A stretch of DNA of 64,000 nucleotides from IMGVR_UViG_3300033984_000473:124001-188000, one strand, 5' to 3'. Numbered from the stretch's first letter, positions 26,489 through 56,519 are shown. Notes: generated by a model from the letters alone, not told the origin. Numbers and translations are program-made.

Positions 26489-28054
26489 TTAAATTGTTAT
26501 TTTTGCTCTTTCTCTAATTTCTTCGAATGTGTAATCAACAAGGATTTCACCATTTCTAAATACTTCAACCAATTCATCTGTTACTGAATCAAAGTCAGCA
26601 TCCATTGATGTAACGGTTCTGTATGTACCATCATCATTCTTAACTAATTTAAGCTTTCCTTGCTTAGATTTTTTGAATGATTTTGTAATGTTACCATCAG
26701 CATCCATTTCAGTTGGTGACTTAACAATATTTCTTTCTTCACCATTAACAATTGCATAACATGCTTTGGTTGCGAAGTTTTGCGTATCTCTGTTGATATC
26801 TGCTTGTAGCAATTTACCACCCATACCCAACGCTAAGTTCTCTGGAGAGATTTTCAATTCATCTAACATTGCGTAGATTTCTCTGATTGAATCCAAATTT
26901 ACACCATCACCTTGAATAACACGTACTTGTGGTGGCAATACCTTGTAACCTTTTTCATTGGTTGTGTAACCAAATTTATCGAATAAGATGTTGAAGATTT
27001 CTTTTAAAGTCATCAATACATCACCAGAATCTGGGCGTATAACCAATTGATTCCCTGGAGTTGCTGGTCTTGATAAAACCAATTCTTTCAACTCAGTTCC
27101 CCAATACTCAGAACATGCTCTGAAAATGTTAAATGAATCTGATACACACGCAACCAATCCAGTAGGATAAGTTTTCAATACACGCATCATAAGTGCTAAC
27201 TCACCTTCTTCACCGTTTAGGGTCATGATTGAGTGCTCTGTTGCTGGGATTGATAAACCATACACAGTTTCTGTGTTATAAAGGTCACGGATTAATTTTG
27301 ATGCTACTACGGTGTCTGAACCTCTAAAGTTCACCAAGTGAGCAGAACCACCAATCTTAGCTGATTGTACACTTGATACACCACGGAAACCGAAGTCATT
27401 CAATACGAAATCAACAAGGAAGTCGATAAGGCCAGCATCATACGCTGTTCCTTTTACGAATGCGGCAGTAACGATTTTTCTTACTTCTCTAGAAAGTGAA
27501 GCAACGGTAATCGGATACCAAACTTGAAGCAATATTGACTCTAAGAAGTTGGTCAACCATGCACATTCTGGGTCAAGACTTTCAATTACGAATAACACAT
27601 TTTTAGTGTTAACGATAGTTCCTTCTGGAACCGCCTTGATGCTGATAGGTAATTTCCCATCATATTTGTCAACGATGTAATCAAACTTGCTTCTATCGAA
27701 TACACCATCACGACCAAAGATACCTAATTCATTACCTAACATATCGTTAGCTTCATCAACTTCTTCTTTTGTAATAGCAATACCCTCTAAGTATTGTTTA
27801 AGTACAATCTGTAAACCATAGAATACGGTTTCTGAAAATTTACCACCTCTTGATTCCATGTATGAAACCATCTTGGTCATTTCAGAACCATAGAATTTGT
27901 GGTGTGAATATTTGTAACCATCGGAACATAAGACCAAGTTATCTGGCTTAGTGATGATTTTAGTAAGGTATTTTTGCATACCTTCAATACTAGACCAGTC
28001 TTTATTTTGAATGGCTGTCGCTAAATTCGTAGCTAATTGTGTTTGTAAACTCAT
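26489..28054 (-). CDS. nadV: nicotinamide phosphoribosyltransferase
   Basis: SDGYK.SH, DFGFRG, PATEHS, VSDS, IRPDSG, IQGDG, GMGG.LLQ, KSKQG. Confidence 0.93.
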   Translation of the reverse strand: MSLQTQLATNLATAIQNKDWSSIEGMQKYLTKIITKPDNLVLCSDGYKYSHHKFYGSEMTKMVSYMESRGGKFSETVFYGLQIVLKQYLEGIAITKEEVDEANDMLGNELGIFGRDGVFDRSKFDYIVDKYDGKLPISIKAVPEGTIVNTKNVLFVIESLDPECAWLTNFLESILLQVWYPITVASLSREVRKIVTAAFVKGTAYDAGLIDFLVDFVLNDFGFRGVSSVQSAKIGGSAHLVNFRGSDTVVASKLIRDLYNTETVYGLSIPATEHSIMTLNGEEGELALMMRVLKTYPTGLVACVSDSFNIFRACSEYWGTELKELVLSRPATPGNQLVIRPDSGDVLMTLKEIFNILFDKFGYTTNEKGYKVLPPQVRVIQGDGVNLDSIREIYAMLDELKISPENLALGMGGKLLQADINRDTQNFATKACYAIVNGEERNIVKSPTEMDADGNITKSFKKSKQGKLKLVKNDDGTYRTVTSMDADFDSVTDELVEVFRNGEILVDYTFEEIRERAKITI

Positions 28055-28130
28055 ATTGTTAAATTTTTTGTTCTTATTTGATACAAAGGTACTAAAAGTT
28101 TTTTGGATAACCAAATATTATATCGATTAT

Positions 28131-39916: not shown

Positions 39917-40240
39917 TTACTCATAAATTTTTTTAATTTCATATGTTGAGCTAAAATTCATCTCAATGAAAAACCCTAACTCGTTTGTAAATAAATTTTC
40001 ATTAATAACGAACCCATCTGTATCATAATTAATATCTAAGTCATCTAAATAAATTAGTTGTTTTATATCATCTAAATGATATAAAGTTTTAACATAATGT
40101 ATTGATAACGAACCTCTATTAATTCTAATAAATAAATTAAATTCAGAAATTGGCGAAAATTCGTCACCTTCAATAATCGTTATTGGTAATAGTAAATAAA
40201 TTCGTTTTAATAAATCTTCTAAGGTCTCAAATTTTGTCAT
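39917..40240 (-). CDS. hypothetical protein
   Basis: ORF behind a promoter box. Confidence 0.55.
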   Translation of the reverse strand: MTKFETLEDLLKRIYLLLPITIIEGDEFSPISEFNLFIRINRGSLSIHYVKTLYHLDDIKQLIYLDDLDINYDTDGFVINENLFTNELGFFIEMNFSSTYEIKKIYE

Positions 40241-40294
40241 AATTTTATTTTTTCTACAAATATACGAATTAATTCGACTGATTGCAAGTTTTTG

Positions 40295-40389
40295 AGCAGA
40301 AAAGAGGAATCGAACCTCTGAATCTTCACGTAGTCATACGATTTTTTCTCCCTTGGAATTGGGTGTTTTACCAACTAAACTATTTCTGC
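40295..40389 (-). ncRNA. atypical tRNA-Gly(TCC)-like RNA with imperfect anticodon stem and ~25-nt extra arm
   Basis: acceptor GCAGAAA/TTTCTGC, D-loop AGTTGGTA, T-arm AGAGG-TTCGATT-CCTCT; insert contains a CGTA..TACG hairpin. Confidence 0.6.
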
Positions 40390-40392
40390 ATG

Positions 40393-41307
40393 TAACAAAG
40401 TGAGCGTAGCCACGTTCCTGTTTTATTTCATCATTTATCTTTTATAGAGTATTTTTGTTTTTGTTTTTAATAATATTGGTTCTAATTGCTGCTTCTCTCA
40501 TTTTTTCTCTAGCTTCTTCAGATAATACTCTTTTACCACCAACTAGTTTGCTTTTAACTAAATTTGATAGTTTAATTTTTTGTTCTTTACCATCTTCAGA
40601 ATCCCAATAATTTGTGATTTGTTTAGACATAAATTCTTTATATTCATCACCTCTTTCGAATAAACCACCATTAGGTATAAATCGACCATCTGAAATTGCT
40701 TTTTTTATCGAAGAACTTAAATTTTGCTTGTGTTCTTCAGTCCACAAATAATTAATAACACCTTCACCACCATCAGTTAAATTTAATAATGGTCCAGTTT
40801 TAATATCACGTCTTCCAATTTTCTTAATCATCAGTTTTTCAAATTCTAACGCTTCTAATTCATTTTCAGTTGTTAATATTTTTTCATAAAATATTTCAGA
40901 ATCTTTATTAATCATCTGTCTAATTTTAGATAAAACTGGTGATTTTAATTTGGTTCTTTTAGCTCGTCTGTAATGTTCATACATTCGTAATTTAGAACCC
41001 TTTCCAACATAAAATGGTGTTTCACCATCTTTTAAAACATAAACATAATACTCCATAATTTTCTACTTTATCTTAACTTATACCCGTTAGATATAAATAT
41101 CTTGATATTTTGAAAAAGCCACTACCCGTCTATCATCGCAATCCAAGTTCCCTTGCTAAGACTGTATGTGTTGCACCCCGTGTTGCGGTAGTAATAACGA
41201 TACTTCGTTGACAGTCCCACTTTTAGGCCTTCGTAGGTATCTCCTACCTCTTGGAGAGATGTCGTGAACTTCCTCTGTTGCCAGCGATGAATCCTCTTTC
41301 TTTGTTA
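40393..41307 (-). ncRNA. rnpB: RNase P RNA (divergent), interrupted by a GIY-YIG ORF; segments 41119-41307 and 40393-40441
   Basis: P1 TAACAAAG/CTTTGTTA, P2 TTCATCG/TGATGAA, P3 CTG-GCAA-CAG, P4 GAGGAAGTTCACG / ACAGGAACGTGGCT with bulged U, AGCAAG, GGGTAG and AGATAAATG conserved elements. Confidence 0.8.
40442..41056 (-). mobile_element. GIY-YIG homing endonuclease inside the RNase P RNA gene
   Basis: YYVY...FYVGKG...R, E..A..FE, GPLLNLTDGGEG, NUMOD-like tail; own ATATTTAT promoter. Confidence 0.85.
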
Positions 41308-41676
41308 TTCTATTTCTATTTTTTTAATCATTTCAAATGGTAAAAAACCATCCAACCTTGTTTCAGCTACATCAGCAAAATATGGCAAGTCTTCCAAATA
41401 GAACTCACCCATTGTAAAGTTGATACATAGGAACTTCCCTTTGGTAGCATCCCATTTAGCCACATGACCAGCTCTCCATCTATGACCGTTGTAATAAGCA
41501 CCATCAATAAGGTTTTCTTTAGGTATCATAACAGCAACCATTCTAATCAAACGATTAGCTTCCTTGATATCTTCATCTTTTCTTCTTAATTCAGCTTCAA
41601 TCATAGCATCGTTAATCTTATCAGCTTTTTCTTTACCGACAACTTCTACCAACTTATTATAATGTTCTGTTTTCAT
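41305..41676 (-). CDS. hypothetical protein
   Basis: IPK..L..GAYY.G..R...VA.W motif; own promoter box. Confidence 0.7.
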   Translation of the reverse strand: MKTEHYNKLVEVVGKEKADKINDAMIEAELRRKDEDIKEANRLIRMVAVMIPKENLIDGAYYNGHRWRAGHVAKWDATKGKFLCINFTMGEFYLEDLPYFADVAETRLDGFLPFEMIKKIEIE

Positions 41677-51993: not shown

Positions 51994-52110
51994 TACAAAG
52001 AGTAGGATTCGAACCTACGTAACTCCCTACGTCATGCTTCCAAACTGAAAAGGAATCGAACCTTACACACGAATTCAAGGGGGAGTGCTTTACCACTAAG
52101 CTATCTCCGT
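51994..52110 (-). ncRNA. tRNA-like RNA with ~50-nt insert in the anticodon loop containing a second T-arm
   Basis: acceptor ACGGAGA/TCTTTGT, D-arm, CTCCC/GGGAG stem, inner AAGG-TTCGATT-CCTT, outer GTAGG-TTCGAAT-CCTAC. Confidence 0.65.
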
Positions 52111-56087: not shown

Positions 56088-56238
56088 TTCATTGAAATTA
56101 TCGGAATACTTGGTTAGCTTTTTTTGATGTCTGCTACCAGTTTCCTTTTTACGTAACTCTATACGTTCTTGTCTTGTTAACGGGCTCCCAAGCGGTCACC
56201 CCCATTTTGTGTGTTTTTCATAACATTTATATTTGTTG

Positions 56239-56311
56239 TTGAGGAAGAGGGACTTGAACCCTACTCTACCACCCGTCTAGGTGGTCTTCTAACCAGTTAA
56301 AGTATTCCCCA
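56239..56311 (-). tRNA. atypical tRNA with 6-nt anticodon loop (TAGACG; Val-like or undetermined)
   Basis: acceptor TGGGGAA/TTCCTCA, D- and T-arms present, CCACC/GGTGG stem. Confidence 0.5.
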
Positions 56312-56400: not shown

Positions 56401-56519
56401 CAGCGGCACCAGGAATCGAACCTAGAACAATGGCGTGACAGGCTATATTGAATGCTGAACGTAATCTTCTTAATCAGATTAACTTTTTTAACATTGTTAT
56501 ACCATTTAACTATACCGCT
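56401..56519 (-). ncRNA. tRNA-Asp-like RNA with the Y-like module inserted in the anticodon arm, member C
   Basis: AGCGGTA/TGCCGCT acceptor, G73, D and T arms; insert AAAAAAGTTAATCT-loop-AGATTACGTTCAGCA-...-GC-CTGTCAC-GC. Confidence 0.7.

What the first reader, a model, noticed from the sequence alone, without database searches (positions are those of the whole stretch)
40393..41307. Phage RNase P RNA split by a GIY-YIG homing endonuclease gene
RNase P core elements bracket the 204-aa GIY-YIG ORF. The 5' part (41119-41307) has the P1, P2 and P3 strands, GAGGAAGTTCACG, AGCAAG and GGGTAG. The 3' part (40393-40441) has AGATAAATGATGAA and ACAGGAACGTGGCT. P1 is a perfect 8 bp, P2 pairs TTCATCG/TGATGAA, and P4 keeps the bulged U with compensatory changes relative to the bacterial consensus. 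The ~680-nt insert, with its own promoter, sits where P18 lies in type A RNAs, a peripheral helix absent in some RNase P RNAs. The ORF stop abuts the conserved AGAUAAAUG. Inference: the ribozyme tolerates a protein-coding loop or assembles from two pieces, making it a new homing niche with no intron.
Basis: partly seen in the sequence, partly recalled or inferred. Interest (0 to 1): 0.88.

Follow-up and report, generated by a model that had tools for sequence, protein, structure and literature searches.

The report
Phage RNase P RNA carrying endonuclease gene
A large phage encodes its own miniature RNase P ribozyme (the RNA that trims tRNA precursors), and in this genome a selfish homing-endonuclease gene sits inside that RNA gene with no intron, at a spot where related ribozymes have an optional helix, so the ribozyme probably tolerates a large insert or works as two pieces.

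Summary
No activity or expression was measured.

- **The RNA.** Window 41307..40393 (minus strand) is a reduced bacterial type-A RNase P RNA gene inside a tRNA array.
- **The insert.** A 675-bp cassette (40441..41115) splits the gene. It holds a 59-nt hairpin leader and a 204-aa GIY-YIG endonuclease ORF.
- **Empty allele.** A 98%-identical phage contig (L002) lacks the cassette. That allele hits Rfam RNase P (E 1.4e-5) and an independent family model (128.6 bits, E 8e-38).
- **Family.** At least 73 IMG/VR loci carry related RNAs, mostly 185-260 nt. P2, P3, P4, P5, P7, P15 and P16 covary strongly. Only one of 17 loci tested passes Rfam's gathering score.
- **Insertion site.** The cassette sits exactly where helix P18 lies. 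That site is empty in 27 and occupied in 14 of 41 aligned relatives.
- **Recurrence.** The same endonuclease clade (61-90% identity) occupies the same site in five other diverged lineages, and the cross-insert helices stay compensated.
- **Related arrangements.** One relative has the gene circularly permuted with its ends at this site. An unrelated GIY-YIG gene interrupts another lineage at P16/17.
- **Not an intron.** No intron features were found.

The parts
40393..41307 (-). Whole interrupted RNase P RNA gene, from the P1 5' strand to the P1 3' strand, including the insert
   Evidence: Sequence read. Joined allele L002 6371-6608 scores 128.6 bits with family model R1 and 25.4 bits with Rfam RNaseP_arch, E 1.4e-5.
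41116..41307 (-). 5' part of the RNA: P1 5' (41307-41300), P2 5' (41291-41285), P3 (41284-41275), CR-I/P4 5' (41275-41263, bulged U41267), P5 (41261-41258 with 41177-41174), P7 (41247-41244 with 41191-41188), reduced S-domain, P15 (41170-41168 with 41122-41120), P16/17 hairpin (41162-41128), GGGUAG (41127-41122)
   Evidence: R1 hit 41090..41295, 53.8 bits, E 4.4e-15. Helices defined by covariation in 41 relatives.
40441..41115 (-). 675-bp mobile cassette inserted at the P18 position
   Evidence: Absent from L002, whose junction reads GGGTAGTGGCTT|AGATAAATG. The flanks are identical apart from 1 nt in the RNA, at 41137.
41057..41115 (-). Cassette leader: a long hairpin that ends 2-3 nt before the AUG
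   Evidence: MFE -8.6 kcal/mol, z -2.84. Equivalent hairpins occur in all six interrupted lineages (z -2.8 to -5.2) and as a perfect 17-bp hairpin in L083. The motif is unique in the window.
40442..41056 (-). GIY-YIG homing endonuclease ORF, 204 aa
   Evidence: Pfam PF22945, E 2.5e-8. 180 homologues found. GIY-YIG catalytic-type positions Y16 G18 R24 H28 N92 are invariant and E73 nearly invariant across 28 homologues.
40393..40440 (-). 3' part of the RNA: AGAUAAAUG joiner (40440-40432), P2 3' (40433-40427), ACAGGAA (40421-40415), P4 3' (40414-40408), P1 3' (40400-40393)
   Evidence: R1 hit 40399..40454, 13.5 bits, E 0.008. Pairs with the 5' part across the insert.
40294..40389 (-). tRNA-like gene starting 3 nt after the RNA's 3' end. 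RNase P cleavage at its 5' end would release the ribozyme's own 3' end.
   Evidence: Rfam tRNA 47.3 bits. ARAGORN.

Best explanation
The window encodes a phage version of the bacterial type-A RNase P RNA. It is cut down to about 238 nt: it has P1-P5, P7, P15, P16/17 and a small specificity domain, and no P18. It is embedded in the phage's tRNA array, where it presumably processes the phage's own pre-tRNAs together with an RNase P protein of unknown origin.

In this genome a free-standing GIY-YIG homing-endonuclease cassette has inserted exactly at the P18 position. It has no intron. It is presumably copied into empty alleles after the endonuclease cleaves them.

The gene most likely stays functional, for two reasons. 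P18 is a peripheral, naturally optional expansion site. The two halves are held together by P1, P2, P4 and P15.

In read-through transcripts the leader hairpin probably hides the endonuclease start codon. The 615-nt ORF would then ride along as an inert arm, or the RNA would be cut there and act as two non-covalently assembled pieces.

Shown: RNase P homology, the exact insertion site, presence/absence polymorphism, recurrence of the arrangement, and conserved cross-insert pairing.

Inferred: catalytic activity, the form of the mature RNA, endonuclease specificity, and the role of the hairpin.
For: - **Homology.** Rfam hits on the empty allele and on relatives: E 1.4e-5, 3.8e-8, 2.7e-22, and 168 bits above gathering score for L026. 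Independent model R1 gives E 8e-38 for L002 and finds both halves in the window.
- **Covariation.** Seen in P2, P3, P4, P5, P7, P15 and P16 across 41 RNAs.
- **P18 site.** The P18 block is 0 nt in the bact_a alignment. The site is empty in 27 and holds hairpins in 14 of 41 relatives, at least 10 with GNRA loops.
- **Mobility.** Two empty/filled pairs: window/L002 differing by 1 nt, and L080/L008.
- **Persistence.** The same endonuclease clade occupies the same site in L076, L080, L081 (also L172/L174), L077/78 and L082 (also L085/86/L173). All ORFs are intact at 202-207 aa. P1, P2 and P4 stay fully paired through compensatory changes, with 3 P2 variants and 5 P4 variants.
- **Co-divergence.** Endonuclease identity tracks RNA identity (Spearman 0.73 over 15 pairs).
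- **Break tolerated.** L083 has the gene circularly permuted, with P1 capped by a loop and both ends at the P18 site.
- **Independent second case.** An unrelated GIY-YIG ORF interrupts the L009 lineage at P16/17, seen in three samples.
- **Leader hairpin.** Conserved in all lineages. It parallels the start-site-sequestering hairpins of T4 I-TevI and segB (PMC2988022).
- **Precedents.** P18 is naturally lost in Aquificales and Chlorobium, and a permuted B. subtilis P RNA folds (PMC8457005). M1 RNA has been reconstituted from fragments (Guerrier-Takada and Altman 1992, listed in PMC11143913).
Against: - There are no expression or activity data.
- In the window itself the insertion is recent (1 nt difference from L002). 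Its intact halves therefore say nothing on their own; the argument rests on the older lineages.
- Repeated homing into intact alleles could mimic conservation.
- The 15 identity pairs are not independent.
- The insert abuts the conserved AGAUAAAUG joiner near the active site. In L076 and L081 the ORF even runs 10 nt into it.
- No conserved helix closes the two ends of the insert.
- Deleting P18 from E. coli RNA lowers the rate more than 3000-fold (PMC11143913).
- No RNase P protein gene was looked for.
- Rfam finds nothing in the window as it stands.
Confidence: 0.7

Rival explanations
1. The insertion killed the gene. The interrupted RNase P RNA is a fresh pseudogene, and the phage relies on the host's RNase P. 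Intact halves reflect recent or repeated homing only.
For: The window and L002 alleles differ by a single nucleotide, so the event is recent. Empty alleles circulate (L002, L008). A phage RNase P RNA is probably not essential. Rfam sees no RNase P in the window.
Against: Five further lineages have endonucleases diverged to 61-72% identity and RNAs diverged to 64-91%. They keep every P2 and P4 pair across the insert through compensatory changes. Endonuclease and RNA divergence are correlated. The permuted L083 gene keeps all core elements. Both independent insertions lie in peripheral elements, not in the core.
Confidence: 0.2
2. The cassette is removed from the RNA by splicing, through an unrecognised self-splicing or enzyme-dependent intron, which restores a continuous ribozyme.
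For: GIY-YIG endonucleases are classic residents of phage group I introns (PMC2988022). Structural RNA genes are usual intron hosts.
Against: Only 59 nt upstream and 1 nt downstream of the ORF are non-coding. No intron family is hit even at E<=10. The boundaries (…GGCUU|UUUC … UAAA|AGAU) lack the group I U/omega-G or group II GUGYG/AY signatures. In L076 and L081 the ORF reads into the downstream RNA. L079 has the same endonuclease free-standing, 3' of an intact RNA.
Confidence: 0.04
3. The RNA family is RNase P-derived but no longer a tRNA-processing enzyme. It might be, for example, a decoy for the host RNase P protein or a regulator of tRNA array expression. Integrity of the catalytic core would then matter less.
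For: The specificity domain is strongly reduced. Most members fall below Rfam gathering scores. No cognate protein gene is known.
Against: The catalytic-core hallmarks are invariant in 41 relatives: GAGGAAG.UC, the bulged U in P4, AGAURAAUG, ACAG, and the GGU of the P15 loop that binds tRNA CCA ends in bacteria. The genes sit inside tRNA arrays and are often directly flanked by tRNAs.
Confidence: 0.08
4. The similarity to RNase P is a chance resemblance of short motifs around an ordinary intergenic endonuclease gene.
For: No Rfam hit in the window itself. The sequence is AT-rich.
Against: E 8e-38 for the joined natural allele with an independent model, and E 4e-15 for the window's 5' part. The family links to a bact_a hit of 168 bits. 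Covariation is extensive.
Confidence: 0.01

Closest known systems
Bacterial RNase P RNA, class A (Rfam RF00010)
   Same: Shares the P1-P4 pseudoknot core with bulged U in P4, the GAGGAA, AGAUGAAUG-type and ACAGAA..GGCU conserved regions, P5, P7, P15 with a GGU motif, and P16/17. The largest family member (L026) passes the gathering score at 168 bits.
   Different: The RNA is 185-260 nt instead of 350-400. The specificity domain is reduced and P18 is absent or optional. A fixed P4 signature, AGU[U]C…GGCU, replaces AAG[U]CC…GCUU. It is phage-encoded inside tRNA arrays, and most members score below the gathering threshold.
Naturally reduced RNase P RNAs: Pyrobaculum/Thermoproteaceae type T, Mycoplasma fermentans, candidate-phyla-radiation bacteria (PMC3579882, PMC8172020)
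   Same: Peripheral helices (P12-P14, P16-P18) are lost while the catalytic core is kept. Both are missed by standard covariance-model thresholds.
   Different: Those are cellular genes and the only RNase P RNA of their organism. These RNAs are viral, sit beside a host enzyme, and host mobile endonuclease genes.
Free-standing GIY-YIG homing endonucleases of T4-like phages (Seg proteins; segB lies in the T4 tRNA cluster) (PMC2988022)
   Same: A GIY-YIG nuclease of about 200 aa with no intron. It shows presence/absence polymorphism between close relatives, lies in the tRNA gene region, and has a leader hairpin reaching the start codon like those that regulate segB and I-TevI.
   Different: Seg genes lie between genes. 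Here the cassette lies inside a structural, catalytic RNA gene. Identity to any GenBank phage protein is at most 39%.
Intron-encoded endonucleases in group I introns of phage and organelle RNA and protein genes (for example I-TevI)
   Same: A selfish nuclease gene placed in a highly conserved functional gene at a site that leaves the host gene usable.
   Different: There is no intron core and no splicing signature. Tolerance must come from the host RNA's architecture, not from splicing.
Permuted and split RNA genes: two-piece permuted tmRNA, permuted tRNA genes (PMC3978253), engineered circularly permuted or fragment-reconstituted RNase P RNA (PMC8457005; Guerrier-Takada and Altman 1992)
   Same: L083 has the 3' half upstream of the 5' half, with P1 closed by a loop. 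The interrupted genes could yield two-piece RNAs.
   Different: I know of no natural permuted or split RNase P RNA gene, and the literature searches returned none. Here the break point coincides with an endonuclease insertion site.

Membership tests
Bacterial RNase P RNA class A (RF00010 / clan CL00002) | Covariance-model score at or above the Rfam gathering score | tested here: not met
   Window: no hit at gathering, nor at E<=10. Empty allele L002: 25.4 bits to RNaseP_arch against 84 needed. Relatives: L004 72.3 of 100; L026 168.3 of 100, met.
Bacterial RNase P RNA class A (RF00010 / clan CL00002) | P4 helix with bulged U, formed by the conserved GAGGAA… and ACAG…GGCU regions | tested here: met
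   Window 41270-41263 pairs with 40414-40408, with U41267 bulged. 41 of 41 relatives are paired at the seven core pairs and 40 of 41 at the eighth. Four positions covary.
Bacterial RNase P RNA class A (RF00010 / clan CL00002) | P1, P2 and P3 enclosing the core, with P2 and P4 forming the pseudoknot | tested here: met
   P1 is 8 bp, P2 is 7 bp and P3 is a hairpin in the window. P2 and P3 covary in 41 relatives.
Bacterial RNase P RNA class A (RF00010 / clan CL00002) | P15 internal loop with the GGU motif that pairs with the tRNA 3' CCA | tested here: met
   GGGUAG at 41127-41122. P15 is CAC/GUG, and it covaries as CUG/CAG, CUC/GAG and CCC/GGG in relatives. CCA binding itself is not testable here.
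Bacterial RNase P RNA class A (RF00010 / clan CL00002) | Full specificity domain (P8-P14) that reads the tRNA T-loop | tested here: inconclusive
   P7 is present and covaries. About 55 nt lie between the P7 strands, against about 150 in E. coli. In the bact_a alignment of L004 an 89-nt block is reduced to 19 nt.
Bacterial RNase P RNA class A (RF00010 / clan CL00002) | Cleaves pre-tRNA 5' leaders | not testable with these tools
   Needs an in vitro assay or rnpB complementation.
GIY-YIG homing endonuclease | GIY-YIG catalytic domain with conserved Tyr, Tyr-x-Gly, Arg, His, Glu and Asn | tested here: met
   Pfam PF22945 at 34.5 bits, above the cutoff of 27. Y16, G18, R24, H28 and N92 are invariant and Y4, Y6 and E73 at least 90% conserved across 28 homologues.
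GIY-YIG homing endonuclease | Presence/absence polymorphism at one precise site between otherwise near-identical genomes | tested here: met
   Window against L002. L080 against L008.
GIY-YIG homing endonuclease | Cleaves the empty allele and is copied into it | not testable with these tools
   Needs a nuclease assay on the L002-type sequence.
Group I or group II intron | Conserved intron RNA core flanking or containing the ORF | tested here: not met
   No intron family is hit at E<=10 on 40250-41450. Only 59 nt of non-coding insert lie 5' of the ORF and 1 nt lies 3' of it.

The most novel reading that the evidence does not exclude
Large phages carry a widespread, so far unannotated family of miniature RNase P ribozymes. 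One endonuclease lineage has specialised on that ribozyme gene without any intron. It thereby produces natural RNase P RNAs that function either with a 675-nt protein-coding arm or as two non-covalently joined pieces. In at least one phage (L083) it has produced a circularly permuted RNase P RNA gene. The endonuclease or its leader hairpin might even assist assembly.
Probability: 0.5. Interest if true: 0.9.

Novelty: new variant of a known kind. Interest (0 to 1): 0.86.

Why it matters
RNase P RNA is one of the two universal ribozymes. A viral, miniaturised version is a natural minimal-ribozyme data set, with at least 51 non-redundant sequences here and lengths down to about 185 nt.

An intron-less endonuclease gene inside a ribozyme gene shows a third way for selfish nucleases to live in essential RNAs, besides introns and intergenic parking. 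That way is to use an architecturally dispensable expansion site.

The empty, filled and permuted alleles form a ready-made experimental series. It tests how much backbone discontinuity and cargo a ribozyme tolerates in vivo.

It also matters for annotation. Standard Rfam thresholds miss nearly all of these genes. Phage autonomy in tRNA maturation, alongside phage tRNAs and tmRNAs, is therefore underestimated.

Tried and rejected
- **Rfam on the window.** Tried as it stands and on the isolated 5' piece; no RNase P hit. The split gene is invisible to library models.
- **GenBank phages by blastn.** The locus and the full-size relative L026 gave no match, so no cultured phage could be named.
- **MFE folding of the joined RNA.** Uninformative, z -0.34.
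- **First model build.** A trimmed alignment worked.
- **Sigma-70 scan and leader-motif recurrence.** These gave no support for a cassette promoter.
- **Endonuclease-profile scan of IMG/VR.** Swamped by distant GIY-YIG genes; only the three closest loci were associated with RNase P.
- **Metagenome scan with the leader motif.** Only 3 contigs.
- **Nine literature searches.** They covered phage or viral RNase P RNA and endonucleases in RNase P genes, and found nothing on either. This shows absence from the held library only.
- **Relatedness of the two endonucleases.** The window and L009 endonucleases are not related.
- **The G/T difference at 41137.** Considered as an endonuclease immunity change and rejected. 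That position also varies freely (G/T/A) among other alleles.

Full report
**1. Observation.**
- P1 is UAACAAAG (41307-41300) paired with CUUUGUUA (40400-40393).
- P2 is UUCAUCG (41291-41285) paired with UGAUGAA (40433-40427).
- P3 is a CUG-GCAA-CAG hairpin (41284-41275).
- GAGGAA (41275-41270) leads into the P4 5' strand AGU[U]CACG (41270-41263). That strand pairs with CGUGGCU (40414-40408) and leaves U41267 bulged.
- GGGUAG lies at 41127-41122, AGAUAAAUG at 40440-40432 and ACAGGAA at 40421-40415.

Between the two parts lies the 204-aa ORF 40442..41056(-). It is a GIY-YIG nuclease (Pfam PF22945, 34.5 bits, cutoff 27). Its stop codon ends one base before AGAUAAAUG.

**2.
The upstream 123-aa protein led to two IMG/VR contigs. 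L001 is the window's own contig, IMGVR_UViG_3300033984_000473, 232,931 bp. L002 is a 98%-identical relative.

In L002 the RNA is continuous, with the junction GGGTAGTGGCTT|AGATAAATG. A script comparison gave three results:
- the window insert is exactly 675 nt (40441..41115);
- the two RNA alleles differ at one base (41137);
- L002 also lacks the 107-aa ORF 39917-40240.

Rfam finds no RNase P in the window at gathering score, at E<=10, or on the isolated 5' piece. On L002 6375-6604 it gives a full-length match to RNaseP_arch (25.4 bits, E 1.4e-5), with two further RNase P clan matches suppressed.

**3. A large phage family.**
Motif scans of IMG/VR returned 73 loci carrying AGAURAAUG-N10-ACAGRA-N4-GGCUA.
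- In all but one resolvable locus (L055, a weak divergent member; L011 is truncated), a strand complementary to the variable positions follows GGAAG(U/C)UC, 116-325 nt upstream.
- The loci lie in tRNA arrays, often with a tmRNA gene, on contigs up to 476 kb.
- Rfam scores span a continuum: L026 168.3 bits to RNaseP_bact_a (above gathering), L004 72.3 bits (E 2.7e-22), L003 39.6 bits.
- Only 1 of 17 loci tested passes the gathering score.
- The same motif occurs only 7 times in 185,579 species-representative genomes. Three of those are cellular Mycoplasmataceae RNAs. Three (L167, L169, L171) are contigs from metagenome-assembled genomes that carry tRNA arrays, and one (L165) lies on a 546-kb contig with no tRNA nearby.

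An alignment of 41 non-redundant uninterrupted members shows covariation in several helices, by RNAalifold and by my own pair counts.
- P2, P3, P4, P5, P7, P15 and P16 all covary.
- One P4 pair is GC in 21 sequences and AU in 17.
- One P5 pair has five standard pair types.
- One P15 pair is CG 16, AU 11, UA 9.

A covariance model (R1) was built from 20 members, excluding the window, L002 and L008. Its scores are:

| Target | Bits | E-value |
|---|---|---|
| L002 (joined natural allele) | 128.6 | 8e-38 |
| L008 | 133.6 | 2.5e-39 |
| L026 | 46.6 | 7e-13 |
| Window 5' part, 41090-41295 | 53.8 | 4e-15 |
| Window 3' part, 40399-40454 | 13.5 | 0.008 |

The window itself is phage-like. PHROG families for a nuclease (E 1e-162) and a DNA transfer protein (E 1e-151) match its ORFs.

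**4. Where the insert sits.**
In the bact_a alignment of L004, the model's 24-nt P18 block is replaced by 0 nt. This lies between the P15 3' strand plus GC and the AGAUGAAUG joiner. That is exactly the window's insertion point.

In alignment A3 this site holds 1-3 nt in 27 members. In 14 members it holds 23-47 nt of hairpins. At least 10 of those have a GNRA tetraloop hairpin directly before AGAUAAAUG, as bacterial P18 does. The cassette therefore occupies a natural, optional expansion site.

**5. The cassette.**
It consists of a 59-nt leader (41115-41057), the ORF and one further base.
- There is no room for an intron core, no intron family is hit, and the boundaries lack group I or group II signatures.
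- The leader folds into a long hairpin ending 2-3 nt before the AUG. This holds in the window and in all five other interrupted lineages (z -2.8 to -5.2).
- This resembles the hairpins that sequester the start region of T4 I-TevI, segB and mobE in read-through transcripts (PMC2988022).
- The leader motif does not recur in the window, and no sigma-70-like site lies inside the insert on the coding strand. An 'own promoter' is therefore unproven.
- A TTGAAA-18-TAGAAT match sits just upstream of the RNA (41336-41307). Its position relative to P1 leaves its role open.

**6. The arrangement is old and recurrent.**
The endonuclease has about 50 homologues of 40-90% identity. Looking up their contigs and reading the flanks gave the following.
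- The same clade sits at the same P18 site in L076 (90%, NCBI GCA_034680565.1), L080 (71%), L081 (72%), L077/L078 (62%) and L082 (61%).
- L085, L086, L172, L173 and L174 are further copies of two of these lineages from other samples.
- L008 is the empty partner of L080.
- All six ORFs are intact at 202-207 aa.
- Across the insert, P2 and P4 are fully paired in every lineage, although there are three P2 variants (UUCAUC/GAUGAA, CUCAUC/GAUGAG, CCAUAC/GUAUGG) and five P4 variants. P1 also changes in a compensated way.
- Endonuclease identity and RNA identity are correlated (Spearman 0.73 over 15 non-independent pairs). This fits long co-residence better than recent spread of one cassette.
- In L079, on a 518,809-bp contig, a 57% relative is free-standing just 3' of an intact RNA that has a small P18 hairpin.
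- More distant GIY-YIG relatives are not linked to RNase P RNA (L084).

**7. A permuted gene and an independent second invasion.**
In L083 the endonuclease is 57% identical and the arrangement is seen on two contigs. The order of elements is:
- the 3' half (AGACAAAUG…GGCUAAGCUCAUCUU);
- a 3-nt loop;
- the 5' half (AAGAAAGAG…GGGUAGAGGCAC);
- a perfect 17-bp hairpin;
- the endonuclease ORF.

No 3' half follows. R1 finds both halves in that permuted order. P1 is thus closed by a loop, and the RNA's ends fall at the P18 site. This amounts to a natural circular permutation.

Separately, L006, L009 and L010 come from three samples. They carry an unrelated GIY-YIG+NUMOD3 ORF (no BLASTP similarity) inside the P16/17 hairpin of another lineage. 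L007 is its uninterrupted relative. An HNH endonuclease ORF follows that gene.

**8. Mechanism.**
Shown:
- homology to type-A RNase P RNA;
- the exact site and mobility of the cassette;
- its recurrence;
- conserved pairing across it.

Inferred, at about 0.7 confidence: the interrupted gene still yields an active ribozyme.
- P1, P2, P4 and P15 hold the halves together.
- The cassette projects from a peripheral site, either as a silent arm with its start codon hidden by the leader hairpin, or after cleavage or termination as a gap between two assembled pieces.
- The tRNA-like gene starts 3 nt after P1 (40389). RNase P cleavage there would therefore trim the ribozyme's own 3' end.

Published background supports feasibility:
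- P18 is absent in Aquificales and Chlorobium, and a permuted B. subtilis P RNA folds well (PMC8457005).
- M1 RNA activity was reconstituted from fragments (Guerrier-Takada and Altman 1992, listed in PMC11143913).

Points against:
- deleting P18 from E. coli RNA costs more than 3000-fold in rate (PMC11143913);
- the insert abuts a conserved joiner;
- no expression data exist;
- in the window the insertion is too recent to have been tested by selection.

Rivals and rough weights: fresh pseudogene 0.2, cryptic splicing 0.04, non-catalytic RNase P derivative 0.08, chance about 0.01.

**9. Comparison and novelty.**
The RNA works like, and descends from, bacterial class A RNase P RNA, but it fails that family's Rfam threshold. 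It is closest in spirit to the reduced RNAs of Thermoproteaceae and candidate-phyla-radiation bacteria (PMC3579882, PMC8172020).

The cassette is closest to T4 Seg endonucleases. SegB also lives in a tRNA cluster (PMC2988022), but it lies between genes, not inside an RNA gene.

Nine full-text searches found no description of a phage-encoded RNase P RNA, of an endonuclease gene inside an RNase P RNA gene, or of a natural permuted RNase P RNA gene. The library is incomplete, so prior description cannot be excluded.

I rate the finding a new variant of known kinds, with high interest.

Noticed in passing
L083:1253-1500 (Logan ERR8576891_1109, 54,163 bp): Circularly permuted RNase P RNA gene. The order is 3' half, 3-nt loop closing P1, 5' half, a perfect 17-bp hairpin, then a 233-aa GIY-YIG ORF. 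No 3' half lies downstream.
   Followed up: partly
L009:1962-2806 (also L006 and L010); uninterrupted relative L007:2170-2375: A second, unrelated GIY-YIG+NUMOD3 endonuclease ORF (211 aa) interrupts a different lineage of the phage RNase P RNA within the P16/17 hairpin. Its stop codon lies inside the downstream RNA. An HNH endonuclease ORF (L009 2797-3372) follows directly.
   Followed up: partly
IMG/VR loci L003-L075: 73 viral loci carry mini RNase P RNAs in tRNA/tmRNA arrays. The shortest are about 185 nt with almost no specificity domain. Only 1 of 17 tested passes the Rfam gathering score.
   Followed up: partly
window 40294-40389 (-): A 96-nt tRNA-like gene lies 3 nt after the RNase P RNA. 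It has a long variable arm and an odd anticodon loop. Five differences from L002 cluster in its centre, while the rest is identical. A homologue follows the RNA in L079.
   Followed up: no
window 56238-56311 (-): ARAGORN calls a tRNA with a four-base anticodon (agac), meaning an 8-nt anticodon loop.
   Followed up: no
window 51994-52110 (-) and 56401-56519 (-): Rfam tRNA matches of 117 and 119 nt that ARAGORN does not call. These may be tRNA genes with inserts of about 45 nt.
   Followed up: no
window 39917-40240 (-): A 107-aa ORF with no Pfam match is present in the window but absent from the 98%-identical L002. This is a second indel next to the tRNA.
   Followed up: no
L082:2239-3228: Two more GIY-YIG/NUMOD ORFs lie immediately 3' of the interrupted RNase P gene. 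The first is 33% identical to the window endonuclease. The region looks like an endonuclease hot spot.
   Followed up: partly
window 41057-41115 (-) and the equivalent leaders in L076, L077, L080, L081, L082: The cassette leader forms a conserved long hairpin up to the start codon. A TATAAGT motif sits in its 3' strand in 5 of 6 lineages. It may regulate endonuclease translation or mark a processing site.
   Followed up: partly
window 26489-28114 (-): Nicotinamide phosphoribosyltransferase gene (PHROG 448, E 6e-139), an auxiliary NAD-salvage gene typical of large phages.
   Followed up: no
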